IMG/VR virus record: IMGVR_UViG_3300027747_002221
Location: 124,001 to 188,000 of that record
Reading direction: 5' to 3' (one strand)
DNA: 64,000 nucleotides
The notes beneath the pieces are model-generated. The model was not told the DNA's origin. It did not search any database and was given only the letters and a program-made list of their open reading frames with translations. The position numbers and the translations under genes were made by a program. Positions 9,491-57,107 of this stretch are shown here, one piece after another (the first letter of the stretch is position 1; every line of letters begins with the position of its first letter).

Positions 9491-10055
9491 CCTTATCAAA
9501 CTGTAAAAATGGTTTGTATTTTCTTATCAGTCTTGATATATCTGGCCACATAATGTCATTACTGAGGTCTGTGTCAAAGTGTACCAGAAAAGGATTAATC
9601 TTTTCTAATATAACTAAAGTTTCCAGTGTTATCGTTTTTCTAAGAAATGCTTTAATTATATATGGATGCTGTGTTTTTGTGATTTTAAAAGCATCTTCAA
9701 ATTGTTTATTATCTGATTCAAGATCTTCTATTAGGTTATCCAAATCGTTAGTAAAAATATAGGATAAACTTTCAATTCTTTTTTTCCATTCTGCGTAGCG
9801 TTCACTTGCTTCAGAATCAAATAGGCCTCCCCAACGATCTCCTGATGTAAAGTTGGCAACTAAAAAATTTGCTACTTCCTCATCCGAATATGTTTTAGAT
9901 ACCTTTTTAATAGAATATAAATCTTTACGTTTTGCGAAAGCTTGTCGGCTAGCTCTTACTTTACCTCGTTGAGCTATAACATCATAATTTTCGGTAGTAA
10001 AATGTAATTTCAAAGCAATATACATCTTATACACTGAGTATTCATCCATAATCAC
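9426..10055 (-). CDS. gp59: Helicase loader gp59
   Basis: VYKMYIALKLHFTTENYD...RKDLYSIKKVSK...NFLVANF...ITLETLVIL. Confidence 0.9.
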   Translation of the reverse strand: MIMDEYSVYKMYIALKLHFTTENYDVIAQRGKVRASRQAFAKRKDLYSIKKVSKTYSDEEVANFLVANFTSGDRWGGLFDSEASERYAEWKKRIESLSYIFTNDLDNLIEDLESDNKQFEDAFKITKTQHPYIIKAFLRKTITLETLVILEKINPFLVHFDTDLSNDIMWPDISRLIRKYKPFLQFDKEKFNGILRRRVGHNIAEDSAS

Positions 10056-10318
10056 AGGGGTAACTTCCCTCTCTTTTTAAAATAGTTGCCGTCTTCTGCT
10101 TCTATTTGAACCTTATCTTTTAAGGATTGATTTATTAGTTTAGAAATAGATTCAATGTCTATATCTACTTCTTCGCAATATTGAATTATTGCTTCCATAT
10201 AACTAATATCCTGTGCTGCAACTCTACCCTCAATATAAAGTGAAAATTCATTAGGCGATCTAAATTTCTTGGTTATAATTAAGCTATCTGTTAATATGTA
10301 TTGTAATTCTTCACTCAT
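10052..10318 (-). CDS. gp33: Late-transcription coactivator gp33
   Basis: FSLYIE...ISYMEAIIQYCEE..ID.E.ISKLIN.SLKDKVQIEA. Confidence 0.9.
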   Translation of the reverse strand: MSEELQYILTDSLIITKKFRSPNEFSLYIEGRVAAQDISYMEAIIQYCEEVDIDIESISKLINQSLKDKVQIEAEDGNYFKKRGKLPL

Positions 10319-10989
10319 ACTTTTTCCTGGAATAATACGTCATCCATAAAACTCATAAACGTATCTTTATCCACACCAAAATTAACCATCATTGCCGGTG
10401 TGTGAGGATTCTTTTTCTGAAACCTACAATAATGATTATGCTTTTCGTAATAGTCTCTATCCGCATAGGGCACTCCTACATTATAAAGGTAAAAGTTTAA
10501 ATTGTCAATAACTGTTTGTTTAAGTTGATCTAATTCTTCCTGCGTTTGTATATTGCCCGCAGCCAGCATATTTGGACTAAAAATTTCAAGTGCCCATTCA
10601 GGTAACTGTCTTGGTTTAGACCAAGTTAATTTAGACATCTTAGTCTGATACCATTCATATAAAAATGAATCTCCAACTTTAGAAAAATCATGAAATGCCC
10701 CAGTAATTTTATTTTGTCCGCAAACTATATCAAAACCAAATATAGGATCAGGGCAATTATAGTGAGGAAAAATACACATATGCATAACCCACATCTTTTT
10801 AGTTGCAGATGCATCTACAATTTCTATATGTGCTCTTCTAAAATTTTTACTAGTCCAGACATAATTTTTCCAAGAAAAATCCACATCAGTATGCGAATAT
10901 TTAGGATTAATTTCTTCTATACTATATAATTTAAATTTATCTATAAGTGTTGTTGATAATGCTTGCGCCTGCGAAAACATTTCAATCAT
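10315..10989 (-). CDS. Ferredoxin-dependent bilin reductase (PcyA/PcyX family)
   Basis: FRRAHIEIVD, VMHMCIFP, PIFGFDIV, GAFHDFS, LPEWALEIFS, QKKNPHT; adjacent to heme oxygenase. Confidence 0.85.
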   Translation of the reverse strand: MIEMFSQAQALSTTLIDKFKLYSIEEINPKYSHTDVDFSWKNYVWTSKNFRRAHIEIVDASATKKMWVMHMCIFPHYNCPDPIFGFDIVCGQNKITGAFHDFSKVGDSFLYEWYQTKMSKLTWSKPRQLPEWALEIFSPNMLAAGNIQTQEELDQLKQTVIDNLNFYLYNVGVPYADRDYYEKHNHYCRFQKKNPHTPAMMVNFGVDKDTFMSFMDDVLFQEKV

Positions 10990-11518
10990 TATATTCTTTT
11001 ACCATTTCAATGTTATGTTTAAATGCTATAATAGCTTCATCTGCTAAAGACACATCCAATTTAGATCTTACTGTTTTAATAAGTGTAGGAATATCCTCAA
11101 ACTTATACATATGCCCACTGCCAGGAGTTAACTTAGCTAGTTGTTGCCCTCCAAACATATCTCCCATATGTCTAACATATACATGAGCTAATAACTTCTT
11201 AGGATCATCTTGTATACTGTCTAAGTATTGTAGATATGTTAGGGTAGACGGTCTAATCTTAAAAACGGTAGTTGCAAGATCTTCACAAAGTTCAGCCCAA
11301 TCCTGTTGTGCTAATTTTGCTCTTTTAAGATCTTCTATACCGTCAAATATAGCATGTTTGGAAGCTAATATTTCCATTAGTCCATATACATGAAATAATT
11401 GATAAACATAATCTGCATATTTTTCTTTATTTACATTGCCTGCAAATATAGATTTTATAAATGGCTGAGATTCTGCTTCCGCATGAACATCGGCTGTCAA
11501 TTCTTTTAGTGTGCTCAA
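10982..11518 (-). CDS. Heme oxygenase (HemO/Ho1-like)
   Basis: LKELTADVHAEAE (proximal His), LLAHVYVRHMGDMFGGQ distal-helix motif. Confidence 0.92.
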   Translation of the reverse strand: MSTLKELTADVHAEAESQPFIKSIFAGNVNKEKYADYVYQLFHVYGLMEILASKHAIFDGIEDLKRAKLAQQDWAELCEDLATTVFKIRPSTLTYLQYLDSIQDDPKKLLAHVYVRHMGDMFGGQQLAKLTPGSGHMYKFEDIPTLIKTVRSKLDVSLADEAIIAFKHNIEMVKEYND

Positions 11519-12141
11519 TTTGTTTTCCTTGAATTTGCTGCAGTACCGATATATGGTCTATGATCCCATTTATAGTCACGGTAATTGCCATTCTTATTTA
11601 CATAGTGTAAAAATGCTTGTGTTTGTCTTTGACCTTGATACGCATCACGCCAATGATTTAACGTATCGCCTTTATAAACAATAAGATCACCTGGCCATAA
11701 GTTAATGGCTTTCTTTTCACCTGTTAAAGTTTCAAACCAAATTTCCCATGGCTCTTCATCAATGGAAATATTAACGGTTGCTGAATACTCGCAACTTGGT
11801 CTATCCTTGTGTATAGCCATTGTTGCCCCATTATAATATATCCTAGCATACGTGTACGTAGGATATAAATTTTTACCTGTTATTTCTTCTATAAGAGGTT
11901 GAAGTTGTAAGGATAATGCTTCGAACGGGAGTGCAGAATAATATGCGAAACTATTGGATATCTGCTCATCATTAAATGCAAATTTATTATCTTCACTTTG
12001 TCCGTTTGCCATGTATTGTAATTTTCTTAGCAACTCAAACTCTAAATCCATATGGTCTAGTTGTTCTAGAGGAAGTACTCCCCGTACAATCTCATATAAA
12101 TCTGTCGCAAACGTTGGTTCATCTAATGTAGTTGTAGTCAT
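11515..12141 (-). CDS. 2OG-Fe(II) oxygenase superfamily protein
   Basis: HKDRPSCEYSATV (HxD), PGDLIVYKG..LNHWR, QAFLHYV. Confidence 0.88.
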   Translation of the reverse strand: MTTTTLDEPTFATDLYEIVRGVLPLEQLDHMDLEFELLRKLQYMANGQSEDNKFAFNDEQISNSFAYYSALPFEALSLQLQPLIEEITGKNLYPTYTYARIYYNGATMAIHKDRPSCEYSATVNISIDEEPWEIWFETLTGEKKAINLWPGDLIVYKGDTLNHWRDAYQGQRQTQAFLHYVNKNGNYRDYKWDHRPYIGTAANSRKTN

Positions 12142-12163
12142 ATCATTATCCTAAAAAATTTGT

Positions 12164-12187
12164 GTTAGCTTTTAAGGATAAGCTAAC
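12164..12187 (-). terminator. Probable intrinsic terminator after rubrerythrin
   Basis: GTTAGCTT-N8-AAGCTAAC stem; T-run downstream on the minus strand. Confidence 0.55.
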
Positions 12188-12215
12188 AAACCCGTATTAT
12201 ATTAGAAACTACTTG

Positions 12216-12653
12216 TTACTGTGTTTCTTTATGCGCAGCTAATGCCTTGGTAAAACGATTAGCATGGCTACGTTCAGCTTTTGCTAATGTTTCAAACCAA
12301 TCTGCTACTTCTTTAAACCCTTCGTCACGAGCAGTCTTAGCCATACCTGGATACATGTCAGTGTATTCATGTGTTTCGCCGTGAATAGCTGATTCCAAAG
12401 CTTCAGTAGTAGTTTTAGCACTCATACCTGTACCTGGATCACCCGCACCACCCTCGATCAAATATTCCATGTGGCCATGGGCGTGACCAGTCTCACCTTC
12501 AGCAGTACTACGAAACAAGGCGGCAATATCATTATCACCTGCTACATCTGCCATGTTTGCAAAATATAAGTATCTACGATTAGCTTGCGATTCCCCTGAG
12601 AATGCAGCCTTCAAGTTTTCCTCTGTGCGAGTACCTTTAATTTTTTCACTCAT
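12216..12653 (-). CDS. rbr: Rubrerythrin (short form lacking the rubredoxin domain)
   Basis: [23 protein letters not shown]...[10 protein letters not shown]...[14 protein letters not shown]...AERSHA diiron motifs. Confidence 0.93.
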
Positions 12654-12668
12654 ATAATTTTCCTAAAA

Positions 12669-13217
12669 TCAAAAGCTGCGTGTATACTGTAGACGTACTG
12701 CGTCTTTTTCTTCGTCACCGAATGACCGGCTCCAACGAACTGCAACTGCGTCTTGTTTGGTAAGTGCATAACCCACTGCAACGTGTGCGCGTGTTGTCTC
12801 AAACAATTTCTTTGATTCAAAAGAATTACGATAGCGTCCACCTACATCTGCAGTCAAGCCTGCAACTAATGGAAACTTAACACCTGCATCAATAGCGTAA
12901 TGGCTGAAGTGATCTGAGCTGGTAATTTTTTCACCAAGGCGTCCACCTAAATACAATGCACCAAAGCTTTTCTTTGCACGAACTTCAATACCTTGAGAAA
13001 TAGCACCGCTACCAATTTCTGTTTGGCTGTTTTCCATTTTAATACTGTAATCAATACCATCTACTTTGTTACCAACAACAAGTGCTTCCTTGATGTTTTC
13101 TGCGCCGGTTTTGCGATTGCTTTCATCATAGTATTCCAATGATGCATAACCTTGAGCCAATGCGGCACCTGCACTAAATAAAAATGATACTGCTACTAAC
13201 TTAATAATTTTTTTCAA
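12669..13217 (-). CDS. Outer-membrane beta-barrel protein (porin-like)
   Basis: TTG start with AGGAG SD; Sec signal ending AALA; alternating amphipathic strands; C-terminal ...VRLQYTRSF. Confidence 0.8.
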   Translation of the reverse strand: MKKIIKLVAVSFLFSAGAALAQGYASLEYYDESNRKTGAENIKEALVVGNKVDGIDYSIKMENSQTEIGSGAISQGIEVRAKKSFGALYLGGRLGEKITSSDHFSHYAIDAGVKFPLVAGLTADVGGRYRNSFESKKLFETTRAHVAVGYALTKQDAVAVRWSRSFGDEEKDAVRLQYTRSF

Positions 13218-14015: not shown

Positions 14016-14133
14016 ACGTGTGTTTATGATCTATGGACTTTCGTAATGCTTTTAACCACAATTTCTTTTCTTTAACTTTATCATGATTGATACACGCTTG
14101 ATACAACTTCTTTACTATTTTTTGAACTTTCAT
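14002..14133 (-). CDS. Possible small basic protein (43 aa)
   Basis: Manual: MKVQKIVKKLYQACINHDKVKEKKLWLKALRKSIDHKHTYAIK; overlaps the tail of the PlcP-like gene. Confidence 0.4.
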   Translation of the reverse strand: MKVQKIVKKLYQACINHDKVKEKKLWLKALRKSIDHKHTYAIK

Positions 14134-14884
14134 TATCGTTTTCCTTAGTCCAGGTTACAATTTCCCATCGTCCATTATAATGTTCAACAAGAGCAGTACA
14201 AGATTCAACCCAGTCTCCGTCGTTCATATATATGATTCCATCAATCTCTTTAATCTCAGCATGATGTATATGTCCACAAATAACTCCATCATACCCTCGC
14301 TTTTTACAATATCCTGCGAGGTTGTTTTCAAACTGAAACATAAAGTCTGATGCTTTTTTTACTCTATGTTTTAAATACTTAGATAACGACCAATATCCAA
14401 ATCCAAATTTATGACGAACCCAATTAAAACGAGAATTCCAATCTAGAACTAAATCGTATAACTTATCGCCTAGAAATGCTAACCAAGGTGCAAGTCTAGT
14501 AATACCATCAAATAAATCACCGTGCGTTATCAGGTAGTGTTTACCATCAACACCTATATGTTCCGTTTGATTTTTTATTTCAATTAAACCAAAACTGAAA
14601 CCATATGGTATCATTGGCCTTAAGAATTCATCATGATTACCAGCAATGTAGATTACTCTTGTACCTCGTTTAGCGTGTCCAAGAATTCTTCGTACAACAT
14701 TGGTATGAGATTGCTTCCACCGCCATTTATTCTGTTGTATTTTCCATACATCAATAATATCACCTACAAGATATAAAGTCTCGCAAGTATTATGTTTTAA
14801 AAAATTATTTAACTTATCAGCTTGACAATCTCGAGTACCTAAATGAACATCACTTATGAATATTGTTTTATAGGTTCTTTGCAT
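14081..14884 (-). CDS. PlcP-like phospholipase C (LpxH/LpxH2-family metallophosphoesterase)
   Basis: TIFISDVHLGTRDCQA, LYLVGDIID, GNHDEFLR, HGDLFD, WLAFLGD, YWSLS, DGVICGHIHHA, NDGDWVESCTA. Confidence 0.85.
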   Translation of the reverse strand: MQRTYKTIFISDVHLGTRDCQADKLNNFLKHNTCETLYLVGDIIDVWKIQQNKWRWKQSHTNVVRRILGHAKRGTRVIYIAGNHDEFLRPMIPYGFSFGLIEIKNQTEHIGVDGKHYLITHGDLFDGITRLAPWLAFLGDKLYDLVLDWNSRFNWVRHKFGFGYWSLSKYLKHRVKKASDFMFQFENNLAGYCKKRGYDGVICGHIHHAEIKEIDGIIYMNDGDWVESCTALVEHYNGRWEIVTWTKENDNESSKNSKEVVSSVYQS

Positions 14885-14897
14885 AAGTTACCTTTAA

Positions 14898-15213
14898 ATT
14901 AATGATAGGTTATTCTGTTACGAGGAAACCTACCGAAACCCTAAGCAGTGTTTAGGCTGCTAATGCGAACTGTTCGTCGTTTGCGTTTACGTTTTTTGCT
15001 TGATTAACGGTCATCGCCTACCGTGCTGTCCACGCTGTTACTATTTGCCCTGTCGAAACCAATGTCAGGCCCATTAGAAAGAACTCTTTAGTATAGTCTA
15101 TAGCACTTGTCTGTCTCTATACAGGATGAAAAATTCTTTCTGGTGGACCTGGCGGGAGTCGAACCCGCGTCCAGAACATATTTCTCTTTGCTTCATACAG
15201 CAATAACTTACTC
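14898..15213 (-). ncRNA. ssrA: tmRNA, circularly permuted two-piece form
   Basis: Minus strand: T-arm GCGGG-TTCGACT-CCCGC and ...CAGGTCCACCA (ends 15141) come before GGGCCTGACATTGGTTTCGACAGG (starts 15072); 7-bp acceptor stem with G3:U; tag frame ANDEQFALAA-TAA (14984-14952). Outer ends are approximate. Confidence 0.95.
14901..14950 (-). repeat. Direct repeat copy A (3' part of the tmRNA coding piece)
   Basis: See 13240-13289. Confidence 0.92.
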
Positions 15214-15315
15214 TTTTACATTATAAAAAAGACTTTTTGCTATCCAGAACATATAGTTGACTACAACTAAGATGCCCCACATATAAACCCAATGCCAATT
15301 TTCAAACATAAGAAC

Positions 15316-46399: not shown

Positions 46400-47296
46400 T
46401 TAGAATGTGATTGTACCTGAGCTATAGAATTTATATACAACATATCCGCCTGAAGATGTTACGACTACATTAGATCCTGTGGTACTTGCAGCAGAAAATT
46501 CTGTAGGATGACGTAAAACAACTATACCAGAACCACCTTGTCCAAATTGCCCAGCACCCGATTGTCCGCCACCTCCACCTCCACCTCCGCCGGTGTTAGT
46601 TAAACCATTATTAACTGCGCCGCCGCTTGAAGGTTGTCCTCGGCCACCGCCCCCCGCACCGCCATTTCCTCCGGGTGTGCCGTCGCCACTTCCCCCGCCG
46701 CCGCCGGCATAGGCAACATTTGCACCTGTAATTAAACTATATCTTCCGTCCCCACCGTTACCCACCGTTACACCGTTGCTACCTACAGCACCTGCGCCCC
46801 CTCCCCCGGCGCCAAAGCCGGCGGCGGTTCCACCTGCAAATCCTTCTACCGGAGTATAGCTACCTGCATTGCCCGGACCTGCCTGCCCAATAGTTTGATC
46901 GCCTGCTGATACATAACCGCCACCGCCGCCGCCGGATCCGCCTGATCTACCATGTCTGTTTGCAGGTGTGACAGAATATGTTCCTCCACCTCCACCTCCA
47001 GATGCGGTTATTGTGGAAAATACAGAATTTGTTCCGTTAGCTCCAAAAGTGGCTGCAGTAGTTCCCCCGGCACCTACGGTGACCGTTATTGGGGTTCCCG
47101 GGGTGAAATCACTATAACCTGTATTAGTTCTGTAGCCGCCGCCCCCACCTCCGCCACCTGCTGAATTACCGCCTGAGCCGCCCCCAGCAACAACTAAATA
47201 TTCTAATGTGAGGACAGAACGGAGAGGAACATTTGCCGAATTTAATCGGTTGTTAACATTATTAAAATTTCTTGCCGTATGGCGTTTTGTTGACAT
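46400..47296 (-). CDS. Glycine-rich (polyglycine II) adhesin-like protein 1
   Basis: EYLVVAGGGSGG...GGGGGGG...YAGGGGG...GGSGIVVLR...VYKFYSSGTITF. Confidence 0.75.
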   Translation of the reverse strand: MSTKRHTARNFNNVNNRLNSANVPLRSVLTLEYLVVAGGGSGGNSAGGGGGGGGYRTNTGYSDFTPGTPITVTVGAGGTTAATFGANGTNSVFSTITASGGGGGGTYSVTPANRHGRSGGSGGGGGGYVSAGDQTIGQAGPGNAGSYTPVEGFAGGTAAGFGAGGGGAGAVGSNGVTVGNGGDGRYSLITGANVAYAGGGGGSGDGTPGGNGGAGGGGRGQPSSGGAVNNGLTNTGGGGGGGGGQSGAGQFGQGGSGIVVLRHPTEFSAASTTGSNVVVTSSGGYVVYKFYSSGTITF

Positions 47297-49301: not shown

Positions 49302-50057
49302 TTAAAATGGTTTCGTTGCGCTCTGTGTCACTGTGCCGTTGTTGGTGACAGTTTGTGTACTTGATGAATCTGTAGTAACAGCTGCACCCAACATTAAATA
49401 TTCAGTATATGCATCAATCGTTAGTTCTATACTGGGAGCTGATACTGTACTATTATTCGTATCATATCTTGCTTCACCTATAGTAACTCTAAAATTAGTT
49501 ATGTAACCGGGAAAATATCCACCATAGTATCTACCCACTTGATCAGATGAACCATACCAATCATACGAATCTATACAAGTTCCTGCAGGAAAACTAGTAG
49601 GATCAAAATTACCTGCTGCAAATGATGCACGATAGCATGTAACAGGTGCACCTGGACTACCCAATGTGCCTACATACATTGTTTCTAAACCATTGGGGTT
49701 GCGGTTTAAAATAATATATTGCCATGTGTTTGTTTGTAATGTTCCAGGAGACCAAGTATAAGTTATTGTGCCATGTCCGCCAGATACATCTAACATGATA
49801 TTATAATCATCAGTTGTAAATAGATGCATACCATATTCATTGGTAGTACCTAACCATCCCCTGGAAGTAAAATCGCTATTATTATAAAACCAGCCTTCTA
49901 TTGTAAAAGCTCCAGCGCTCATAGTTAAACCTGGATTTAAACTCAAATATTGATTGGTGCCGTTAAAACTTAAACTACCTCGTAGTGTGGGACCAGGGAG
50001 AGGCGGGGGAGGAGAAACTGTTATTCCTCCGTTAATTCTTGTCCCATTTATTAGCAT
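49302..50057 (-). CDS. LamG/concanavalin A-like domain virion protein
   Basis: SLSFNGTNQYL, FTIEGWF, WQYI, GYITNFRV. Confidence 0.82.
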   Translation of the reverse strand: MLINGTRINGGITVSPPPPLPGPTLRGSLSFNGTNQYLSLNPGLTMSAGAFTIEGWFYNNSDFTSRGWLGTTNEYGMHLFTTDDYNIMLDVSGGHGTITYTWSPGTLQTNTWQYIILNRNPNGLETMYVGTLGSPGAPVTCYRASFAAGNFDPTSFPAGTCIDSYDWYGSSDQVGRYYGGYFPGYITNFRVTIGEARYDTNNSTVSAPSIELTIDAYTEYLMLGAAVTTDSSSTQTVTNNGTVTQSATKPF

Positions 50058-50065
50058 ATATTTCC

Positions 50066-50746
50066 TTAGAACGGATTCAATGAAGAACTTGTTACAGCAC
50101 CATTATTAGTAATTGTTATATTATTTGTTGACGAATCTTTTAGGAAATTAGCATCATTCGAGGTGTTTAATAATAATTGGGTACCCCCGATTGCACTCAA
50201 TGGTGAGGTAGGGACAGTAATTGTTGATCCGATGTAAAGTGCTGTGCCGCTAACAATTCTAAAATTGCTTATACGACCATTAAAATAACCATTACCTTGC
50301 ACCGCACTATATGCAATATCAATTGATCTATTTGCTGTACTATTATATCCTATGCCACTTTGGGACATTACAGAAACTCCGTTTACATAAAGTGTAAGAG
50401 TTCCACTTGCTCTTACTAATGCAATATGATGCCAGGTCCCTACAGTTATTACTGTATTAGTAGCACTATTGCGTATACCGCCTTCACCAAAGTAGTAAAT
50501 ACCCCCATTACCATTAAGATCTACATTATCACGATCAGAACTAAAATACCACAAACGCCCAGAAAGATTATTGGGGTAAATCCAGGTTTCCATAGTAAAA
50601 TCGTTTGTTCCAAAAGCAAACGCAGAACTTGACGGGGTATTTAAATATTGACTTGTGCCATTAAAGGATAAACTACCCTGCAATACGGGGGCTGCCGGAG
50701 GAGAAATTGTCATTCCACCTTGTTGTCTCATTCCTGTTATTATCAT
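50066..50746 (-). CDS. LamG/concanavalin A-like domain virion protein
   Basis: SLSFNGTSQYL, DFTMETWIY, WHHIALVR...LYVNG, FNGRISNFRIV. Confidence 0.88.
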   Translation of the reverse strand: MIITGMRQQGGMTISPPAAPVLQGSLSFNGTSQYLNTPSSSAFAFGTNDFTMETWIYPNNLSGRLWYFSSDRDNVDLNGNGGIYYFGEGGIRNSATNTVITVGTWHHIALVRASGTLTLYVNGVSVMSQSGIGYNSTANRSIDIAYSAVQGNGYFNGRISNFRIVSGTALYIGSTITVPTSPLSAIGGTQLLLNTSNDANFLKDSSTNNITITNNGAVTSSSLNPF

Positions 50747-50750
50747 ACGG

Positions 50751-51695
50751 TTATCCGGTAAATGTTATCGTTCCTGGTCCAGTAAATGTATAATATACAT
50801 TGCCATTTGAAGTAGTAACAGTGTTACTACCTGTAATATTAGATGTTGCAGTAAAATATGCAGGATGTGCAAAAATAGCCACGCCTGATCCGCCAGCTCC
50901 GCTTGCCGATGTGGCGGTGTGTGCACCAGCACCACCTCCACCGCCGGTATTTACGTTACCGGCAACAGCCTGGAATGCTGTACCTGGCGGATTCTCTCCG
51001 CCGCTCCGTCCGCCTCCGCCGAGGCCACCGGGACTAGGAGCAACGGGAGAAAAACTATAATCTGCAGCTCCACCGCCGCCGCCGGCATAATAATTACCAT
51101 TTACCCATGCATTACCATCGCCGCCATATCCTTGTAATGTTCCAGTTTTTCCTGTAGTACCAGCGCCACCGCCCCCACCGCCATACTGTCCGCCACCTGT
51201 TCTTGAATTTCCTGGGGCGCCAGGATTTCCCTGTCCTGCTGTACCTGTACCGCCCGTATTGTTTGGGCCTCCACTACCTGCTGAATTTCCTGCACCTCCG
51301 CCCGATCCCCCGGGACGACCATTGTACTGTGGTGAGAAGTATCCTGTGCCGCCACCGCCACCGCCTGCAGCAGTTAATGTGCCTGTTAACGGAGAAGCTA
51401 AGATTGAGGGTGTACCGGGTTCGCCCCAGTTACCGCCATATGGCGCGCCAGCATTTCCTGCACCACCGCCACCTATTTGTGTAACGGCAAAGCTAGCAAA
51501 CACTCCTGTTGATAATACAAAACTGTTTGCAATATATCCACCTGCACCACCGCCGCCACCATAATAATTGGCACCTCCACCGCCGCCTCCGCCAACCAAT
51601 AGATATGATAATGTAAAGGGCGGGGGTGGGGGTGGCGGTGGTTCGATGTATTGTGCGCCGCCAGATAATACTGCGCCGCCTGTTAAAATTAACAT
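50751..51695 (-). CDS. Glycine-rich adhesin-like protein 2
   Basis: Leader + poly-Pro + polyglycine motifs; ends TFTGPGTITFTG. Confidence 0.75.
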   Translation of the reverse strand: MLILTGGAVLSGGAQYIEPPPPPPPPFTLSYLLVGGGGGGGANYYGGGGGAGGYIANSFVLSTGVFASFAVTQIGGGGAGNAGAPYGGNWGEPGTPSILASPLTGTLTAAGGGGGGTGYFSPQYNGRPGGSGGGAGNSAGSGGPNNTGGTGTAGQGNPGAPGNSRTGGGQYGGGGGGAGTTGKTGTLQGYGGDGNAWVNGNYYAGGGGGAADYSFSPVAPSPGGLGGGGRSGGENPPGTAFQAVAGNVNTGGGGGAGAHTATSASGAGGSGVAIFAHPAYFTATSNITGSNTVTTSNGNVYYTFTGPGTITFTG

Positions 51696-51704
51696 ATTAT
51701 TTCC

Positions 51705-52847
51705 TTAAAATAAGATTGTACCTGAGCTGGTAAATTGATAAACTCTATATCCACCACTTACTGTTATTGTAGGTGAGCCGGTAGTTGTAGTAGCTGCTGT
51801 GTAAGTATCAGGATAACGTATAATTACTATACCTTTACCGCCTGCACCGCTTGGACCACCGCCACCTCCGCCTCCACCGGTATTTTCTGCTCCGTCTAAT
51901 ATGCAGTTTGCAATGGCATTAGTTTGCCCTGGTTTTGCACCACCGCCGCCTGCGCCGCCATACCCTACTCTACGTCCTGCGCCGCCACCTGCATAATACC
52001 TACCTGTACTAGTAATTGCTACTCCTGTATTTGTAGCTGTACCGTTTACATTCATGTAATAAATACCTGTACTACCTGTACCCGTACCTCTTGCAATTAT
52101 ATACGAATTAGCTGGAATTCCGGTACCAGTAACTTGTGTACCTACATCAATTATTCCATCACTAACTGCGGTTACAGTTAATGTATTATTTGAGGAAAAT
52201 ACTGATGCTGTTCCAGTGAAAGGAATTGTTGCATTGCTTTTTACCCCAATGCCACCAAAGCCCTCTGTAGCGGCTGTGCCACCTTGACCACCTGCACCAC
52301 CACCACCCGAACCGTTATCGTTACTATTATTTGTACCGCAATCATATCCCTGGCCGGTAGTTCCTAAACCTTGTACACCCATAATTTGGGCGGCACCTCC
52401 ACCACTACCACCATTACCAACACCTTCTGTGTCATAACGGCGAGGCGAAGTGCCAGAGCTGTTTGGTCCGCCAGCGCCGCCACCAAGTGATGTAATTGTT
52501 GTTATACCACTACCAGATATGGACGAGTTACTACCTTTAAATCCGGAAGTTTCTTCACCATTTACGCTTGCACCACCTGCACCAACTGTAATAGTGTATG
52601 TTACATTTGAACTAATACCAGTTAAGACAGATTCTGCATTTGCACCTCTACCTGAAGATTCGCCGGCGATTGAAGAACGATATCCACCAGCACCACCGCC
52701 ACCTGAGCCAATTGCATCATATCCTCCACCGGAGCCGCCGCCTGCAACAACTATAAATTCTAACGTAGTAGGGGGAGGAGGTGGGGGAGGAGGTATATAT
52801 GTTGCGCCTCCAAATATTGTTGCTCCGCCTGTGATTGTAATTGGCAT
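51705..52847 (-). CDS. Glycine-rich adhesin-like protein 3 (with inserted domain)
   Basis: Same scaffold; extra segment of about 70 aa before YYAGGG. Confidence 0.75.
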   Translation of the reverse strand: MPITITGGATIFGGATYIPPPPPPPPTTLEFIVVAGGGSGGGYDAIGSGGGGAGGYRSSIAGESSGRGANAESVLTGISSNVTYTITVGAGGASVNGEETSGFKGSNSSISGSGITTITSLGGGAGGPNSSGTSPRRYDTEGVGNGGSGGGAAQIMGVQGLGTTGQGYDCGTNNSNDNGSGGGGAGGQGGTAATEGFGGIGVKSNATIPFTGTASVFSSNNTLTVTAVSDGIIDVGTQVTGTGIPANSYIIARGTGTGSTGIYYMNVNGTATNTGVAITSTGRYYAGGGAGRRVGYGGAGGGGAKPGQTNAIANCILDGAENTGGGGGGGGPSGAGGKGIVIIRYPDTYTAATTTTGSPTITVSGGYRVYQFTSSGTILF

Positions 52848-52859
52848 CTTATTTCCTAA

Positions 52860-53816
52860 TTAAAATGTGATTGTTCCTGAGCTGGTCCAAATATATATTC
52901 TATATCCACCTTCTATAATAACATTTGGACTGCCCGTAGTATTCGATGCGGCTGTGTATGTATCTGCATATCTAATAATAGCTACACCTTTTCCGCCGTT
53001 CCCTCCACTTGCTGATCCTGCTGGGTATGAAACTCCTCCACCACCACCGCCTGTGCCTGAAGTTCCATTTGTTCCTGGTATACTCGCGCCGGTGGCGCCT
53101 GCTCCGCCACCACCAGCTCCACCAGCTCCACCTGCGGCACTTGCTCCACCCCCACCGCCGCCGCCGGCGAAATATACATTACTGCCAACAACATTTCCTA
53201 TATTATAAGTTGTGGCTTGTGTTGTAGTAATGATTGTCGAAACTTTACCGATACCACCCGCTTTGCCTGTAGTGCCAACGCTCGCCCCGTCCTCACCTGC
53301 AGCACCTGCTCCACCTCCGCCTCCGCCTGAATAAGCTCCGCCAGTACCACCACGATTACCAAATCCTCCACTAGCACTAGTAGGTTGTAGTCCTGCCCCA
53401 TATGTGGTATGATCGGCTCCGTTCCACGATGCTCCGCCACCTGAACCACCTGCTGTGGCATTTGTATATGGACCATAAAAACCACCCGTGCCTCCACCAA
53501 TAGCTATAACATTACTCGAAGCCAAGATAGATGAGTTCGAACCATTATTGCCGCCGCCGCCGGTGCCGCTTACGCCTGTTCCACCTGCTCCAACAATTAC
53601 TGTTATGAGAGACCCTATGGTAATAGGTAATGCAGTATTTGCTACATATCCTCCTGCACCACCACCACCGCACCCTAAATTAGGAGCACTTGCGCCCGAA
53701 CCACCGCCAGCTACTACCAGATATTCTACTGAACTAAGTACCGGTGGAGGAGAAGGTGGAGGAGGTGTTAAATTAAATCCTGAAAGTGATACGCCGCCTG
53801 AGATTGTAATTGGCAT
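52860..53816 (-). CDS. Glycine-rich adhesin-like protein 4
   Basis: Same scaffold; ends WTSSGTITF. Confidence 0.75.
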   Translation of the reverse strand: MPITISGGVSLSGFNLTPPPPSPPPVLSSVEYLVVAGGGSGASAPNLGCGGGGAGGYVANTALPITIGSLITVIVGAGGTGVSGTGGGGNNGSNSSILASSNVIAIGGGTGGFYGPYTNATAGGSGGGASWNGADHTTYGAGLQPTSASGGFGNRGGTGGAYSGGGGGGAGAAGEDGASVGTTGKAGGIGKVSTIITTTQATTYNIGNVVGSNVYFAGGGGGGGASAAGGAGGAGGGGAGATGASIPGTNGTSGTGGGGGGVSYPAGSASGGNGGKGVAIIRYADTYTAASNTTGSPNVIIEGGYRIYIWTSSGTITF

Positions 53817-53824
53817 CTTATTTC

Positions 53825-53884
53825 CTACCTAAATGTAATTGTTCCAGATTGCCAGAATCTGAAAATGATGTTTTGCGTTTGCAT
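53825..53884 (-). pseudogene. Orphan C-terminal remnant of a glycine-rich paralog (19 codons)
   Basis: MQTQNIIFRFWQSGTITFR, versus NIIYRFWQSGTIIFN at the end of 54824..55774. Confidence 0.8.
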
Positions 53885-53888
53885 AAAT

Positions 53889-54815
53889 TTATCCAACGAA
53901 TCTTATTGTGCCAGGACCAGTAAATGTATAATATACATTGCCATCTAAAGTAGTAACAGTATTACTACCTGTAATATTAGATGTTGCGGTAAAGTACGAA
54001 GGATGTGCAAAAATAACTACCCCTGATCCTCCAGATCCTCCGGCAGTGGCTCCACCTGCCGGATGGGAACCTGCGCCGCCACCGCCCCCAGTATTTACGT
54101 TGCCTGCAAGAGCAAGGAATGTTGTTCCCGGAGGATTTGCGCCGGATCCTCGACCGCCGCCGCCTAAACCACCAGGAGAAGGTGATAGGTTAGCAAAATT
54201 ATAATCTTGCCCACCTCCTCCTCCGCCTGCATAGTAATTACCATTTATCCATGCATTACCGTCACCACCTTGACCTTGCAAGGGACCTGTTCTTCCTGCA
54301 GTACCAGCACCACCGCCCCCACCTCCAGTTTGTCCAAGGGGTGGTCTTGAATTTGCAATTCCGCCAGGATTTCCTTGTCCAGCTGTACCTGCACCTCCAG
54401 TATTAGCTGGTCCTGAGTTGCCAGATGGATTTGCTGCTCCGCCACCCGATCCGCCAGATAGTCCATTAAAGTTAACGCCATCATTTGTACCGCCACCACC
54501 ACCACCTACGGCAATAAGATTTGCACTAAATGCTGCAGAAGATAGGGTTGACGGGGTGCCACTTGCACCTGCTGCACCGCCCCCAGCACCCCCGCCCCCC
54601 AGTGTAAAATTAAAACTATACGAAGATAAGGTGGGCACCACAATACTATTGGCAATATAGCCTCCAGCACCGCCGCCTCCAGCATAAAATGCCCCGCCGC
54701 CGCCACCCCCGCCTGCTACTAATAGATAACTTAATGTAAAGGGTGGTGGTGGCGGAGGTGGAGGGGTAAGGGTAAGCCCTGAAAATATTACACCGCCGCT
54801 AATTGTTAATGCCAT
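53889..54815 (-). CDS. Glycine-rich adhesin-like protein 5
   Basis: Close paralog of 50751..51695. Confidence 0.75.
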   Translation of the reverse strand: MALTISGGVIFSGLTLTPPPPPPPPFTLSYLLVAGGGGGGGAFYAGGGGAGGYIANSIVVPTLSSYSFNFTLGGGGAGGGAAGASGTPSTLSSAAFSANLIAVGGGGGGTNDGVNFNGLSGGSGGGAANPSGNSGPANTGGAGTAGQGNPGGIANSRPPLGQTGGGGGGAGTAGRTGPLQGQGGDGNAWINGNYYAGGGGGGQDYNFANLSPSPGGLGGGGRGSGANPPGTTFLALAGNVNTGGGGGAGSHPAGGATAGGSGGSGVVIFAHPSYFTATSNITGSNTVTTLDGNVYYTFTGPGTIRFVG

Positions 54816-54823
54816 ATTGTTTC

Positions 54824-55774
54824 CTAATTAAAAATAATTGTTCCGGATTGCCAGAATCTGTAGATGATGTTGGCATTGGCATAGGTTACGTTTGGTGAAC
54901 CTGTGGTTGTTGCAGTTGCAAATGTATTTGGATAACGAATAAACGCAATACCAGAACCACCAGCAACACCATTAATAAATGGTGATCCGCTTGGGGAGGT
55001 TCCTCCACCGCCTGCACCACCTCCAGTATTTACGGTACCTACAGTACCCAAACCTGAGCCCACCGCCCCTGCGCCACCGCCACCTAAACCGCCTGTGCCT
55101 GCAGTTCCTCTACCGTTCCATGTGCCGCCACCACCACCGCCAGCATAATACACATTAGCACCTGTTATTGTAGAGGGTGATCCGTCTCCGCCTGAACCAG
55201 CACCACCAGCTCCGCCAGATCCACCAACTGCTCCTGCACCACCTCCACCCCCACCTCCATAATTATTACCAGGTGAACCCGACCCACCAGGATTGCCTTG
55301 TCCAGGCGTCCCTGTTCCGGCAGCACCTGCCGTTGGAGCAGGACCATAGCCTCCACCTCCACCTGATCCTCCAGGTTTTCCTGCATAACCAGTAGCAGAA
55401 GTTATACCGCCACCGCCACCGCCGCCAATGGCAATTACATTTGATGCATAGGATGCTGCAGTTATCGAAGTATTTGCGCCATTTGCACCTGCAAGAGTAG
55501 CTTCTACGTTAGCAGAACCTATACCTCCAGCACCACCTGCGCCAACTGTTATTGTATATAACGTACCGGGAGTGACTGCCAATGCACTATTGGTTATTAA
55601 TCCTCCTGCGCCAGCTCCAGCAACACCACCATCATTACCAACAGTGGCCCCTGAACCACCGCCCCCCGCAACAACTAAATATTGTACTGAACTAAGTGGG
55701 ACAGGTGGAGGTGGTTCAGATGCATATAACGCGCCGCCTACTAATGCCATTCCGCCTGTGATTGTAATTGACAT
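54824..55774 (-). CDS. Glycine-rich adhesin-like protein 6
   Basis: Same scaffold; ends RFWQSGTIIFN. Confidence 0.75.
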   Translation of the reverse strand: MSITITGGMALVGGALYASEPPPPVPLSSVQYLVVAGGGGSGATVGNDGGVAGAGAGGLITNSALAVTPGTLYTITVGAGGAGGIGSANVEATLAGANGANTSITAASYASNVIAIGGGGGGGITSATGYAGKPGGSGGGGGYGPAPTAGAAGTGTPGQGNPGGSGSPGNNYGGGGGGGAGAVGGSGGAGGAGSGGDGSPSTITGANVYYAGGGGGGTWNGRGTAGTGGLGGGGAGAVGSGLGTVGTVNTGGGAGGGGTSPSGSPFINGVAGGSGIAFIRYPNTFATATTTGSPNVTYANANIIYRFWQSGTIIFN

Positions 55775-55783
55775 ATTATGTTC

Positions 55784-56701
55784 CTAACTAAATGTGATTG
55801 TTCCTGAGCTATAGAAGTTGTATACAACATTTCCACCTGAAGATGTTACAACTACATTAGCTCCTGTGGTATTTGCAGCAGAATATGCAGAAGGATGACG
55901 CAAAACAACTAATCCAGACCCGCCGGTTGCTCCCACCCCTCCATACGAACTAGCCCAACCGCCACCGCCACCGCCACCACCAGTATTAGTATTACCATCT
56001 ATGCCGGCATTATTACTGAAATTACCAGCGCCACCGCCGCCTGTGCCACCTGTACCTTGTGTACCTGGTCCATTTCTAGTTCCGCCTCCACCGCCGCCTG
56101 CGTAATTTAATCCAGTTATACTAGATGATGTGCCAGCTCCACCATTACCAGCAACACCCGGTGTTATCCCATTTGCATTTACACCTGCAGAAGCAGAGCC
56201 ACCGCCACCGCCACCCAAATACGCGGGTGAAGTAGTGCCTGTGCCGCCTGCGTATCCTTCTACCGGACTATAACTGCCTTCATTTCCTGTGCCTCCTAAT
56301 GGGTGTCCTCCAGAACCACCTCCGCCGGATCCGCCATTTTGTCCCGGAAGCGTACCTGGCCCTTGATCTGCGCCGACCCCGCCACCTCCGCCAGTAGTGG
56401 AAATACTAACCACACCGCCTATTAATGATGAATTGGCGCCTTTGCCGCCCTGTTGAAGAGCACCGGCATTGGCCTGCCCTGCAGAACCTCCGCTGCCAAC
56501 AGTAATAGTATATGGGGTGCCTGGGGCAATAGTTACGGTAGATTGTCTTAATCCTCCAGCACCACCGCCTCCCCCGCTATTACCGGCACCTCCGCCCCCA
56601 CCTGCAACTATTAGATAATCTATTAAACTAAGTGGGGGAAGCGGCACAAATACGGATAGCCCGTTTGATATTGCCACTCCGCCTGTGAATATAACTGGCA
56701 T
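55784..56701 (-). CDS. Glycine-rich adhesin-like protein 7
   Basis: C-terminus closely matches 46400..47296. Confidence 0.75.
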   Translation of the reverse strand: MPVIFTGGVAISNGLSVFVPLPPLSLIDYLIVAGGGGGAGNSGGGGGAGGLRQSTVTIAPGTPYTITVGSGGSAGQANAGALQQGGKGANSSLIGGVVSISTTGGGGGVGADQGPGTLPGQNGGSGGGGSGGHPLGGTGNEGSYSPVEGYAGGTGTTSPAYLGGGGGGSASAGVNANGITPGVAGNGGAGTSSSITGLNYAGGGGGGTRNGPGTQGTGGTGGGGAGNFSNNAGIDGNTNTGGGGGGGGWASSYGGVGATGGSGLVVLRHPSAYSAANTTGANVVVTSSGGNVVYNFYSSGTITFS

Positions 56702-56702
56702 A

Positions 56703-57107
56703 TTATTTTCCTATTTTTATATGCGTTCTATGTACTCTGCATTGTATTTGGCCATTATAATAATCTTCAGTTTCCAATACTCTGCGATCCATTTGTTCTC
56801 TTGCCTCAAGATAATTACAAGATCCCTTATTGGGACAAATATGTAATATCTCTCTTATAAATTTATCTGTTCCAACTGTCTCTACATCCTTTTTAACTTC
56901 TTCGGATGAGGACCAATAATCTCGCCAATCTGATTCGACCTTTATACGCTTCTTTTTGCCCTTAACCTGTTTAGTTTTACGAAACCAAAAAAGTTTTTTA
57001 CCTATGTATTTCCGTCCAGTAACAGTATTTGTAATCAAATATACATAACCATACGCAGTTTCTGGTATTTCCTCAAAGGGAATATTATTATAAAGCCACA
57101 TAAACAC
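56703..57107 (-). CDS. GIY-YIG nuclease (Seg-like, short)
   Basis: YGYVYLITNTVTGRKYIGKK...WRDYWSS...REILH. Confidence 0.82.
   Translation of the reverse strand: MFMWLYNNIPFEEIPETAYGYVYLITNTVTGRKYIGKKLFWFRKTKQVKGKKKRIKVESDWRDYWSSSEEVKKDVETVGTDKFIREILHICPNKGSCNYLEAREQMDRRVLETEDYYNGQIQCRVHRTHIKIGK

What the first reader, a model, noticed from the sequence alone, without database searches (positions are those of the whole stretch)
10315..11518. Heme oxygenase + bilin reductase pair with PcyA-type catalytic residues in a non-cyanobacterial-looking phage
Seen: adjacent, overlapping HO and FDBR genes; the FDBR has H-x-E (RAHIE), H (VMHMC) and D (FGFDIV). Known: these match PcyA His74/Glu76, His88 and Asp105 (Synechocystis numbering). 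Phage ho+pcyA/pebS pairs occur in cyanophages, and hemO+pcyX pairs come from phages assigned to Alphaproteobacteria. From memory, characterised PcyX has Asp rather than Glu at the Glu76 position (verify by alignment). Inference: the product (PCB-type or PEB-type) and its role in an apparently betaproteobacterial, phycobilisome-free host are open. Options include reprogramming host bacteriophytochromes, antioxidant function, or sinking biliverdin to drive iron release.
Basis: partly seen in the sequence, partly recalled or inferred. Interest (0 to 1): 0.68.

Follow-up and report, generated by a model that had tools for sequence, protein, structure and literature searches.

The report
Phage haem oxygenase plus bilin reductase
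A large freshwater phage that does not look like a cyanophage carries a coupled gene pair that should turn host haem into a plant-type bile pigment. Its reductase comes from the phage "PcyX" lineage but has the catalytic residues of the cyanobacterial enzyme PcyA, and no enzyme with this combination has been tested.

Summary
Window 10982-11518(-) encodes a 178-aa haem oxygenase and 10315-10989(-) a 224-aa ferredoxin-dependent bilin reductase (FDBR). The two genes overlap by 8 nt.

- **Residues.** RAHIE, VMHMC and FGFDIV align with PcyA His74/Glu76, His88 and Asp105. Crystallised PcyX has Asp where this protein has Glu.
- **Lineage.** Overall the protein belongs to the PcyX lineage: PcyX 5OWG scores E 4.7e-44 against 2.8e-12 for PcyA, and it has the TGAFHDFS and NPHTP signatures.
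- **Clade.** It sits in a large Glu-type clade known only from viral and metagenomic contigs, all of them lake or freshwater sequences. This clade is separated from Asp-type PcyX by one tree split. It also differs at Val68 and Met200, which correspond to PcyA Ile86 and Val225.
- **Synteny.** In the window's subclade the order 2OG-oxygenase, HO, FDBR, gp33, gp59, gp32 is fixed.
- **Host.** The complete 222-kb T4-like genome has no psbA/psbD, phycobiliprotein, lyase, GAF or ferredoxin gene. It carries a betaproteobacterial-type two-piece tmRNA, as do most Glu-type relatives.
- **Precedent.** The freshwater phage CB_2 FDBR lacks Asp55 and makes phycocyanobilin (PCB), but it is a different, Bradyrhizobium-like sublineage.

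The product (PCB favoured, phycoerythrobilin (PEB) possible) and the physiological role are unresolved. I class this as a new variant of a known kind, of moderate interest.

The parts
10315..10989 (-). Ferredoxin-dependent bilin reductase, 224 aa. It is a Glu-type member of the phage PcyX (AX) lineage. Key residues: H54, E56, V68, H70, D87, P195, M200.
   Evidence: - Pfam PF05996 scores 72.8 bits.
- Best PDB hit is PcyX 5OWG at 4.7e-44; PcyA 2D1E scores 2.8e-12.
- The AF2 model has pLDDT 95.6 and the FDBR fold.
- Clade placement comes; residue tables.
10982..11518 (-). Haem oxygenase, 178 aa, a short phage-type HemO. The proximal His12 and the distal-helix GDMFGGQ motif are kept.
   Evidence: - Pfam PF01126 scores 75.2 bits.
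- It aligns to human HO-1 with His25 and the GDLSGGQ region conserved.
- The motif is kept in 92 of 97 related loci.
- An HO gene lies directly upstream of the FDBR in essentially all related loci.
11515..12141 (-). Probable 2OG-Fe(II) oxygenase-like protein, 208 aa. It is the first gene of the overlapping string, and its stop overlaps the HO start.
   Evidence: - phrog_2954 gives E 6.5e-52; the PHROG label 'ferrochelatase' is not supported by Pfam.
- 2OG-FeII_Oxy_2 is a weak match: 18.6 bits, below the cut-off.
- There is no PDB relative.
- It is conserved upstream of HO in the window's subclade.
10052..10318 (-). gp33-like late-transcription coactivator. Its start overlaps the FDBR stop (ATGA). 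It ties the cassette to the gp33-gp59-gp32 core module.
   Evidence: PF16805 scores 81.4 bits. The sequence overlap is shown and the synteny.
12163..12188 (-). Terminator-like hairpin with a T-run, lying between the rubrerythrin gene and the 2OG-HO-FDBR string.
   Evidence: Consensus scan. It is a pattern match only.
10480..10508 (-). Perfect sigma-70 consensus (TTGACA-17-TATAAT) inside the 3' part of the FDBR gene, about 160 nt upstream of gp33.
   Evidence: One search gives a 12/12 match. RNA-library contigs identical to the window cover only 10071-10486 of this stretch. That would fit a gp33 transcript starting here, but it is not shown.
12216..12653 (-). Rubrerythrin-domain protein, 145 aa, without a rubredoxin domain. 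It is a variable neighbour of the cassette.
   Evidence: PF02915 scores 94.5 bits. NCBIfam rubrerythrin matches positions 2-143 of 194, below the cut-off. It is absent from most relatives' cassettes.
14879..15244 (-). Permuted (two-piece) tmRNA of betaproteobacterial type, with tag ANDEQFALAA. It serves as a clue to the host lineage.
   Evidence: ARAGORN. Rfam RF01850 scores 134.3 bits against a gathering score of 84, and RF04321 scores 137.7 bits.

Best explanation
This is a translationally coupled haem-catabolic cassette of a freshwater T4-like phage whose host is not a cyanobacterium. The phage is related to pelagimyophages and cyanomyophages.

**Pathway.** The short HemO should open host haem to biliverdin IXalpha, releasing Fe2+ and CO. 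The FDBR, using host ferredoxin, should reduce biliverdin by four electrons to a phytobilin.

**What the FDBR is.** It belongs to the phage branch of the 'AX' (alphaproteobacterial PcyA / phage PcyX) lineage, in a large and so far uncharacterised freshwater subclade. That subclade combines the PcyX backbone with the full PcyA Glu-His-Asp triad. It also has a swapped pocket pair, Val68/Met200, where PcyX has Met/Val.

**Likely product.** I consider phycocyanobilin (PcyA-type 18-vinyl plus A-ring reduction) somewhat more likely than phycoerythrobilin (PcyX-type).

**Likely role.** No bilin acceptor is encoded by the phage. The most economical role is haem breakdown to mobilise iron, with the FDBR removing biliverdin so that HO keeps turning over. 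The bilin would then be a by-product or a signal.

**Shown versus inferred.** Shown here: gene identity, residues, clade, synteny and the absence of photosynthesis genes. Inferred: enzyme activity, product, electron donor, host and role.
For: **Identity.**

**Coupling.** Overlapping stop and start codons.

**Lineage.**
- PcyX 5OWG is by far the best solved relative.
- The protein has the PcyX signatures TGAFHDFS and NPHTP.
- A 100/100 split separates it from cyanophage PcyA. The CB_2-like PcyA (L099) falls outside the 50-row PcyX-like group.

**Glu-type clade.**
- Among the 112 closest cluster representatives aligned, 109 have Glu, 3 have Gln and none has Asp.
- In the wider set, 148 Glu-type and 30 Asp-type sequences were compared for clade-specific residues. 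All of the marine pelagiphage-like sequences, Mosig included, are Asp-type.
- The Glu-type sequences form one clade with 89/67 support.

**Pocket positions.** Positions that co-switch with 56 include 68 (PcyA Ile86) and 200 (PcyA Val225). Both are active-site positions studied by PcyA mutant structures.

**Functional constraint.** Twenty-three columns are invariant across sequences down to about 31% identity. The HO haem-ligand motifs are kept.

**Precedent.** An Asp55-less phage FDBR makes PCB, and short phage HemOs are active (PMC11480375).

**Not a cyanophage.**
- The genome has no psbA/psbD, CpeT or GAF/PAS_2.
- Three complete or nearly complete related phage genomes also lack psbA.
- Most Glu-type carriers have a beta-type tmRNA.

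**Habitat.** Every sequencing run that holds the stretch is a lake, freshwater or unspecified metagenome.

**Iron-related context.** Nearby genes include a 2OG-Fe(II) oxygenase-like gene, a rubrerythrin and a class I RNR small subunit.
Against: - No activity data exist for any member of this clade.
- As I recall the abstract of Ledermann et al. 2018 (FEBS J 285:339; the paper is not held), Asp55 of PcyX is not catalytic and a D-to-E change did not turn PcyX into a PcyA. Glu56 alone therefore does not predict PCB.
- FDBR regiospecificity is described as not reliably predictable from sequence (PMC13193486).
- At PcyA Asp220 the protein has the PcyX state, Pro. At Val225 it matches neither enzyme.
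- The phage encodes no ferredoxin, so the electron donor is assumed.
- Transcription of the FDBR gene itself is not shown. RNA-library contigs identical to the window cover only its last ~170 nt, and DNA carry-over is possible.
- The iron-release role rests on gene neighbourhood and general HO enzymology only.
Confidence: 0.6

Rival explanations
1. It is functionally an ordinary PcyX. Despite Glu56 it makes phycoerythrobilin via 15,16-dihydrobiliverdin, and the Glu/Asp difference is neutral.
For: - Its nearest characterised relative is PcyX.
- It shares the PcyX signatures TGAFHDFS and NPHTP, and Pro at the PcyA Asp220 position.
- In the careful tree the Glu-type clade nests among Asp-type PcyX sequences.
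- From memory of Ledermann 2018, Asp55 is dispensable and D55E does not change the product.
Against: - Each state is essentially fixed in its own clade: 148 Glu-type and 30 Asp-type sequences were compared, and only a few sequences in the wider set carry Gln. A neutral site should not behave this way.
- Position 56 co-switches with two other pocket positions, 68 and 200.
- Wegner et al. attribute PCB synthesis by CB_2 to the absence of Asp55.
Confidence: 0.3
2. It is a cyanophage auxiliary gene pair, an ordinary ho1 + pcyA that supports phycobilisome pigment supply in a freshwater cyanobacterial host.
For: - gp32 is about 55% identical to many Synechococcus phages.
- Cyanomyophages commonly carry ho1 and pcyA.
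- The catalytic triad is PcyA-like.
Against: - The complete genome has no psbA/psbD, no CpeT and no above-threshold phycobiliprotein.
- The FDBR is only 26-30% identical to cyanophage PcyA and is split from it with 100/100 support.
- The NCBIfam PcyA equivalog scores 85.8 bits against a cut-off of 206.
- The tmRNA is beta-type, not cyanobacterial.
- The literature states that PcyX-lineage genes are not found in cyanophages (PMC13193486).
Confidence: 0.05
3. The cassette exists to make a chromophore that reprograms a host bilin sensor (a bacteriophytochrome, or a BBAG/GAF-type protein). Haem breakdown itself is not the point.
For: - CB_2 vPcyA can supply PCB to assemble a functional phytochrome in vitro.
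- Bradyrhizobium ORS278 pairs an AX-clade PcyA with a PCB-binding BphP.
- Pre-PcyA clusters in beta- and gammaproteobacteria sit next to bilin-binding globins.
Against: - The phage genome has no GAF, PAS_2, phycobiliprotein or lyase gene.
- The host is unknown, so no target could be examined.
- The cassette travels with a 2OG oxygenase, not with any sensor.
Confidence: 0.15

Closest known systems
PcyX (phage phycoerythrobilin synthase; PcyX_EBK42635, PDB 5OWG; Pelagibacter phage Mosig homologue)
   Same: - It is the best solved relative (E 4.7e-44) and is 34-40% identical.
- Both have the TGAFHDFS and NPHTP signatures, His and Asp at the PcyA 88 and 105 positions, and Pro at the PcyA Asp220 position.
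- Both are phage-borne, with hemO directly upstream.
   Different: - This protein has Glu56 where PcyX has its lineage-specific Asp55.
- It has Val68/Met200 where PcyX has Met/Val, and it also differs at positions 89, 90 and 211.
- It is freshwater rather than marine.
- The cassette is inserted at gp33-gp59-gp32, not near the neck genes as in Mosig.
- The accompanying tmRNA is beta-type rather than alpha-type.
AX-clade PcyA ('PcyA*': Bradyrhizobium sp. ORS278 BRADO1265 and freshwater phage CB_2 vPcyA, which makes PCB)
   Same: - Both have the Glu-His-Asp triad.
- Both occur outside cyanobacteria.
- CB_2 is also a freshwater phage with a nearby hemO.
   Different: - This protein is only about 30% identical to the CB_2-like L099 protein.
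- Those enzymes have TG[AV]FLDLS and NEHT (Glu at the PcyA Asp220 position), not TGAFHDFS and NPHTP.
- L099 falls outside the PcyX-like group in the tree.
- The window's genome has no alaS.
Cyanobacterial / cyanophage PcyA (Synechocystis 2D1E; P-SSM4, P-RSM4)
   Same: Both have the FDBR fold (TM 0.82 to 2D1E). His74, Glu76, His88 and Asp105 are all conserved.
   Different: - Identity is 21-30%.
- The NCBIfam equivalog score is far below its cut-off.
- A long 100/100 branch separates the two.
- The cyanophage pcyA genes inspected are not adjacent to ho1.

Membership tests
Ferredoxin-dependent bilin reductase superfamily (Pfam PF05996) | Profile match above the curated cut-off | tested here: met
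   72.8 bits against a cut-off of 31, covering profile positions 30-227 of 228.
Ferredoxin-dependent bilin reductase superfamily (Pfam PF05996) | FDBR alpha/beta/alpha fold with a central sheet | tested here: met
   AF2 model with pLDDT 95.6. Foldseek top hits are PcyA (TMq 0.82), PcyX (TMt 0.84), PebB, PebA, HY2 and PebS.
PcyA (phycocyanobilin:ferredoxin oxidoreductase) | Catalytic triad Glu76 / His88 / Asp105, plus His74 | tested here: met
   E56, H70, D87 and H54 align to these residues with high posterior probability.
PcyA (phycocyanobilin:ferredoxin oxidoreductase) | NCBIfam equivalog NF002760 score at or above 206 bits | tested here: not met
   85.8 bits. Mosig PcyX scores 89.9 and CB_2-like scores 104.2 on the same model.
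PcyA (phycocyanobilin:ferredoxin oxidoreductase) | Groups with cyanobacterial or cyanophage PcyA in a phylogeny | tested here: not met
   A 100/100 branch separates it from three cyanophage PcyA sequences. No cyanobacterial PcyA sequence was available to the tree.
PcyA (phycocyanobilin:ferredoxin oxidoreductase) | Converts biliverdin to phycocyanobilin via 18¹,18²-dihydrobiliverdin | not testable with these tools
   This needs an enzyme assay with HPLC.
PcyX (phage phycoerythrobilin synthase) | Closest to characterised PcyX within the AX clade; phage-encoded, directly downstream of hemO | tested here: met
PcyX (phage phycoerythrobilin synthase) | Asp at the PcyA Glu76 position (the 'PcyX-specific Asp55') | tested here: not met
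   This protein has Glu56. Asp is found in Mosig, 5OWG and all 30 Asp-type relatives. The residue definition follows PMC13446030 Table 2 and PMC11480375.
PcyX (phage phycoerythrobilin synthase) | Converts biliverdin to phycoerythrobilin via 15,16-dihydrobiliverdin | not testable with these tools
   This needs an enzyme assay.
AX-clade 'PcyA*' (Bradyrhizobium ORS278 / phage CB_2) | Groups with CB_2 and Bradyrhizobium; has the TG[AV]FLDLS and NEHT signatures | tested here: not met
   The CB_2-like L099 protein lies outside the 50-row PcyX-like group (94/86 support) and is 30% identical. The signatures differ.
Canonical haem oxygenase (Pfam PF01126) | Profile match above the cut-off; proximal His and distal-helix GxxxG motif | tested here: met
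   75.2 bits against a cut-off of 23. His12 aligns to HO-1 His25, and GDMFGGQ aligns to GDLSGGQ. The motif is kept in 92 of 97 related loci.
Canonical haem oxygenase (Pfam PF01126) | Cleaves haem to biliverdin IXalpha | not testable with these tools
   The comparably short CB_2 vHemO (174 aa) is active in vitro (PMC11480375), but it is only about 25% identical to this HO.

The most novel reading that the evidence does not exclude
The Glu-type clade is a natural hybrid that makes phycocyanobilin on a PcyX scaffold. Under this reading, the coupled switch E56/V68/M200 versus D56/M68/V200 is the PCB-versus-PEB regiospecificity switch that single-site mutagenesis failed to find. The switch would track a host-lineage split: freshwater Betaproteobacteria (beta-type tmRNA) versus marine SAR11-type hosts (alpha-type tmRNA). 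A more extreme form is that Glu-driven vinyl reduction adds to PcyX chemistry and yields a bilin more reduced than either PCB or PEB.
Probability: 0.3. Interest if true: 0.75.

Novelty: new variant of a known kind. Interest (0 to 1): 0.55.

Why it matters
**Enzymology.** What decides which double bonds an FDBR reduces is an open problem. PcyX evolved from PcyA-like enzymes, yet a single back-substitution did not restore PCB synthesis. The clade found here offers hundreds of natural sequences on the PcyX backbone that carry the PcyA triad, together with a short list of co-varying pocket positions. That makes the question directly testable by expressing a few genes.

**Ecology.** Haem-to-bilin cassettes turn out to be a fixed feature of a widespread group of large lake phages. 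These phages lack photosynthesis genes and probably infect heterotrophs. This sharpens the unanswered question of why a phage of a non-phototroph makes a light-harvesting-type pigment.

Tried and rejected
- **Ordinary cyanophage PcyA.** Rejected on the tree, the NCBIfam score and the absence of psbA.
- **Member of the CB_2/Bradyrhizobium PcyA* group.** Rejected. I recovered a CB_2-like gene (L099) from IMG/VR with a degenerate pattern. It is 30% identical and branches outside the PcyX-like group.
- **pre-PcyA.** Not applicable. Pre-PcyA proteins lack the Glu76 and His88 equivalents, and this protein has both.
- **Polarity of the Glu/Asp change.** Unresolved. Rooting on cyanophage PcyA alone made the Asp-type a nested clade. 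Adding the CB_2-like outgroup made the Glu-type the nested clade. The AU test does not reject Asp-type monophyly (p 0.44).
- **Phage-encoded bilin acceptor or partner.** None found.
  - There is no GAF, PAS_2, CpeT, Fer2 or alaS.
  - Two sub-threshold Phycobilisome hits lie in a 1636-aa Thr/Asn-rich fibre-like ORF outside the window. I take them as chance.
- **pmoC in related phages.** None found, but the search had no positive control.
- **'Ferrochelatase' label.** The PHROG label on the upstream gene is not supported. It has only a weak 2OG-oxygenase match and no PDB relative.
- **Bacterial homologues.** Only 8 MAG contigs were found, all Asp-type and marine-looking, and they may be phage contamination.
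- **Ledermann 2018.** The paper could not be read, so its D55E result is cited from memory only.
- **Searches deliberately not run.** The large representative-protein search was left unused, because the protein was not left open. No complex prediction was run because I make no binding claim.
- **Reads.** Read laying was given 3,228 letters.
Full report
**1. What is in the sequence**

On the minus strand, four ORFs run head to tail with overlapping stop and start codons:

| Coordinates | Length | Product |
|---|---|---|
| 11515-12141 | 208 aa | 2OG-Fe(II)-oxygenase-like |
| 10982-11518 | 178 aa | haem oxygenase |
| 10315-10989 | 224 aa | FDBR |
| 10052-10318 | 88 aa | gp33-like late-transcription coactivator |

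These are followed by gp59 and gp32. The junctions read TTGA, ATGATTGA and ATGA, so the genes are very likely translated as one unit. JGI's gene calls on the source contig give the same ORFs.

- The FDBR matches Pfam Fe_bilin_red at 72.8 bits, and the HO matches Heme_oxygenase at 75.2 bits.
- The HO keeps the proximal haem ligand (His12, equivalent to HO-1 His25) and the distal-helix motif GDMFGGQ.
- An AlphaFold model of the FDBR is confident (pLDDT 95.6). It superposes on PcyA (TM 0.82) and PcyX (TM 0.84 by target).

**2. The catalytic residues**

HMMER alignments to solved structures give these correspondences:

| Window | PcyA (Synechocystis) | PcyX (5OWG) |
|---|---|---|
| RAHIE (H54, E56) | KMHLE (His74, Glu76) | RAHLD |
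| H70 | His88 | His |
| D87 | Asp105 | Asp |

Table 2 of PMC13446030 agrees.

The protein as a whole, however, is PcyX-like and not PcyA-like:

- 5OWG scores E 4.7e-44 against 2.8e-12 for PcyA.
- It has the PcyX signatures TGAFHDFS and NPHTP, with Pro at the PcyA Asp220 position.
- It reaches only 85.8 bits on the NCBIfam PcyA equivalog, whose cut-off is 206.

**3. It is one of many**

- The word-indexed protein search found 1,512 relatives.
- Among the 112 closest cluster representatives I aligned (at least 52% identical), 109 have Glu, 3 have Gln and none has Asp.
- IMG/VR holds at least 583 related loci.
- Across the 187 sequences aligned, 148 Glu-type and 30 Asp-type PcyX-like sequences were compared.
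- The Asp-type set includes Mosig and all eight MAG contigs from the genome collection.

In a careful ML tree of 54 representatives, the Glu-type sequences form one clade (89/67 support). The CB_2-like PcyA and the cyanophage PcyAs lie outside the whole PcyX-like group.

The direction of the Glu/Asp change is not resolved. With cyanophage PcyA as the only outgroup, the Asp-type clade is the nested one. An AU test does not reject Asp-type monophyly (p 0.44).

Six alignment positions separate the two types cleanly:

| Window position | Glu-type | Asp-type | PcyA equivalent |
|---|---|---|---|
| 56 | E | D | Glu76 |
| 68 | V | M | Ile86 |
| 89 | V | I | Val107 |
| 90 | C | A | Ala108 |
| 200 | M | V | Val225 |
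| 211 | F | V | – |

Ile86 and Val225 are pocket residues for which PcyA mutant structures exist (titles). The two types therefore differ by a coupled change in the bilin pocket, not by one residue.

**4. Context and conservation**

- A haem oxygenase gene lies immediately upstream of the FDBR in essentially every related locus I could inspect (more than 90).
- In the window's subclade the order 2OG, HO, FDBR, gp33, gp59, gp32 is fixed. This holds for a 63%-identical relative on a 214-kb ENA scaffold and for a 76%-identical one on a complete 190-kb IMG/VR genome.
- The genes further upstream in the window vary between relatives. These are the rubrerythrin, a signal-peptide orphan, a GT2 glycosyltransferase and a metallophosphatase.
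- In Mosig the HO-FDBR pair sits elsewhere, next to the neck genes. The cassette is therefore mobile within this group of phages.

**5. The phage and its host**

The window is part of a 222,055-bp IMG/VR record that CheckV rates as complete. It is T4-like.

- By gp32 its best cultured relative is pelagimyophage HTVC008M (57.5%), with Synechococcus phages at about 55%.
- The genome has no Photo_RC (psbA/psbD), Fer2 ferredoxin, ALA synthase-type aminotransferase, GAF, PAS_2 or CpeT.
- Three complete or nearly complete related genomes also lack psbA.
- It carries 25 tRNA genes and a permuted tmRNA.
- Rfam assigns that tmRNA to the betaproteobacterial family at full length and 134 bits.

I then compared tmRNA type with FDBR type across the related phage records that hold a tmRNA.

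Glu-type records (11 in all):
- Eight, including the window, pass the beta_tmRNA gathering score.
- Two more fall just under it, with the beta score higher than the alpha score.
- One is alpha-type.

Asp-type records (3 in all):
- Mosig, which infects SAR11, is alpha-type.
- The other two pass neither threshold.

This is suggestive of betaproteobacterial hosts for the Glu-type phages. It is not proof, for two reasons. The records are related to each other. And the OM43 phage Melnitz carries an alpha-type tmRNA that does not match its host (PMC9004378).

Every public run that holds the stretch is a lake, freshwater or unspecified metagenome.

In lake metatranscriptome libraries, contigs identical to the window cover gp33 and the last ~170 nt of the FDBR gene (together 10071-10486), the start of the 2OG gene with the rubrerythrin 3' end (11965-12306), and the rubrerythrin 5' part (12465-12653). 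Contigs about 92% identical, from relatives, cover HO and the 2OG gene. This shows presence in RNA libraries. It does not show an FDBR transcript.

**6. What is known, and where this differs**

- The AX clade joins alphaproteobacterial PcyA (Bradyrhizobium ORS278; Glu-His-Asp; makes PCB) with phage PcyX (Asp-His-Asp; makes PEB) (PMC10151467 and PMC13446030).
- Wegner et al. 2024 (PMC11480375) showed that the FDBR of freshwater phage CB_2 is a true PcyA. They attributed this to the absence of Asp55.
- In their sequence set, the only AX-clade proteins with H-x-E are CB_2 and Bradyrhizobium.
- Those two carry TG[AV]FLDLS and NEHT. The window's clade does not.
- I found no paper in the held library that describes or assays a PcyX-backbone FDBR with Glu at this position.
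- From memory of the abstract of Ledermann et al. 2018 (not held), Asp55 of PcyX is not required for catalysis and D55E did not convert PcyX into a PcyA.
- PMC13193486 states that FDBR structure-function relations are not reliably predictable.

Sequence therefore cannot settle the product.

**7. Most likely mechanism**

- HO opens host haem to biliverdin IXalpha, Fe2+ and CO.
- The FDBR, drawing electrons from a host ferredoxin, reduces biliverdin by four electrons.
- I favour PCB at roughly 55:35 over PEB. Three points support this: the Glu is fixed across a deep clade; it co-varies with the Ile86-equivalent position, which takes the PcyA-like state (Val); and the only assayed Asp55-less phage enzyme makes PCB.
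- Two points count against it: the Pro at the Asp220 position, and the PcyX-like backbone.
- For the physiological role, the evidence is contextual only. The phage encodes no acceptor, while iron-dependent enzymes lie nearby. This leans towards haem breakdown and iron mobilisation, with the FDBR as a biliverdin sink. Chromophore supply to a host sensor remains possible.

**8. Verdict**

The pair is a member of a known kind of phage auxiliary cassette (hemO plus an AX-clade FDBR). The FDBR, however, belongs to a large, uncharacterised freshwater variant that mixes PcyX and PcyA features. Interest is moderate. There is no new principle yet, but the finding gives a clean and cheap experimental handle on FDBR regiospecificity and on bilin synthesis in phages of heterotrophs.

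Noticed in passing
window 14879-15244 (-): A phage-encoded permuted (two-piece) tmRNA of betaproteobacterial type (RF01850, 134 bits; tag ANDEQFALAA). It lies about 4.5 kb upstream of gp33, and a variable gene island plus the HO-FDBR cassette sit in between. In phage Melnitz the tmRNA sits directly upstream of gp33. Most Glu-type FDBR phages checked carry a beta-type tmRNA, whereas Mosig (Asp-type) carries an alpha-type one.
   Followed up: yes
window 46400-47296 and 50751-56701 (-), with 49302-50746: Seven paralogous Gly_rich_2 (PF21722) proteins of about 300-380 aa. Six form a tandem run at 50751-56701 and one lies apart at 46400-47296, with two Laminin_G_3 proteins between them. They fall within the most GC-rich part of the window (up to 52% GC against about 35% elsewhere). 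They may be a diversified fibre or host-recognition gene array.
   Followed up: partly
window 10480-10508 (-): A perfect 12/12 sigma-70 consensus (TTGACA-17-TATAAT) inside the 3' part of the FDBR gene, about 160 nt upstream of gp33. RNA-library contigs identical to the window stop at 10486.
   Followed up: partly
window 12669-13217 (-): A 182-aa protein with a clear signal peptide and a beta-strand-like, outer-membrane-protein-like composition. It has no Pfam, NCBIfam or PHROG family. It is also present upstream of the cassette in the closest relatives (L009-L011, L038).
   Followed up: partly
window 12216-12653 (-): A rubrerythrin-domain protein that lacks the C-terminal rubredoxin domain. 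Mosig also has a rubrerythrin, next to its gp32.
   Followed up: partly
window 14081-14884 (-): A metallophosphoesterase with a weak, sub-threshold resemblance to LpxH (UDP-2,3-diacylglucosamine diphosphatase). If real, it would be a lipid A-pathway gene and a hint of a Gram-negative host.
   Followed up: no
window 56703-57107 (-): A SegE-like GIY-YIG homing endonuclease (131 bits), lying between the glycine-rich gene array and the nucleotide-metabolism genes (cytidylyltransferase, dCMP deaminase, RNR small subunit).
   Followed up: no
genome C1:204152-209059 (-), outside the window: A 1636-aa Thr/Asn/Ala-rich ORF with an internal repeat gives two sub-threshold Phycobilisome (PF00502) hits of 19.7 and 18.1 bits, against a cut-off of 22.2. 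It looks like a fibre protein, and the hits are probably chance.
   Followed up: partly
genome C1:28018-33784, outside the window: A cluster of 25 tRNA genes. This is a large complement for a phage and suggests codon usage unlike the host's.
   Followed up: no
L062, L084, L086 (IMG/VR records of 55-65 kb with direct terminal repeats): Asp-type HO-FDBR cassettes also occur in small, complete, non-T4-like phage genomes without a tmRNA. The cassette therefore crosses phage families.
   Followed up: partly
L100:815-1501 (-) and L101:9519-10205 (-): A further FDBR variant with Asn at the PcyA His74 position (RRANLDII) and TGAFLDFS, again directly downstream of an HO gene.
   Followed up: no
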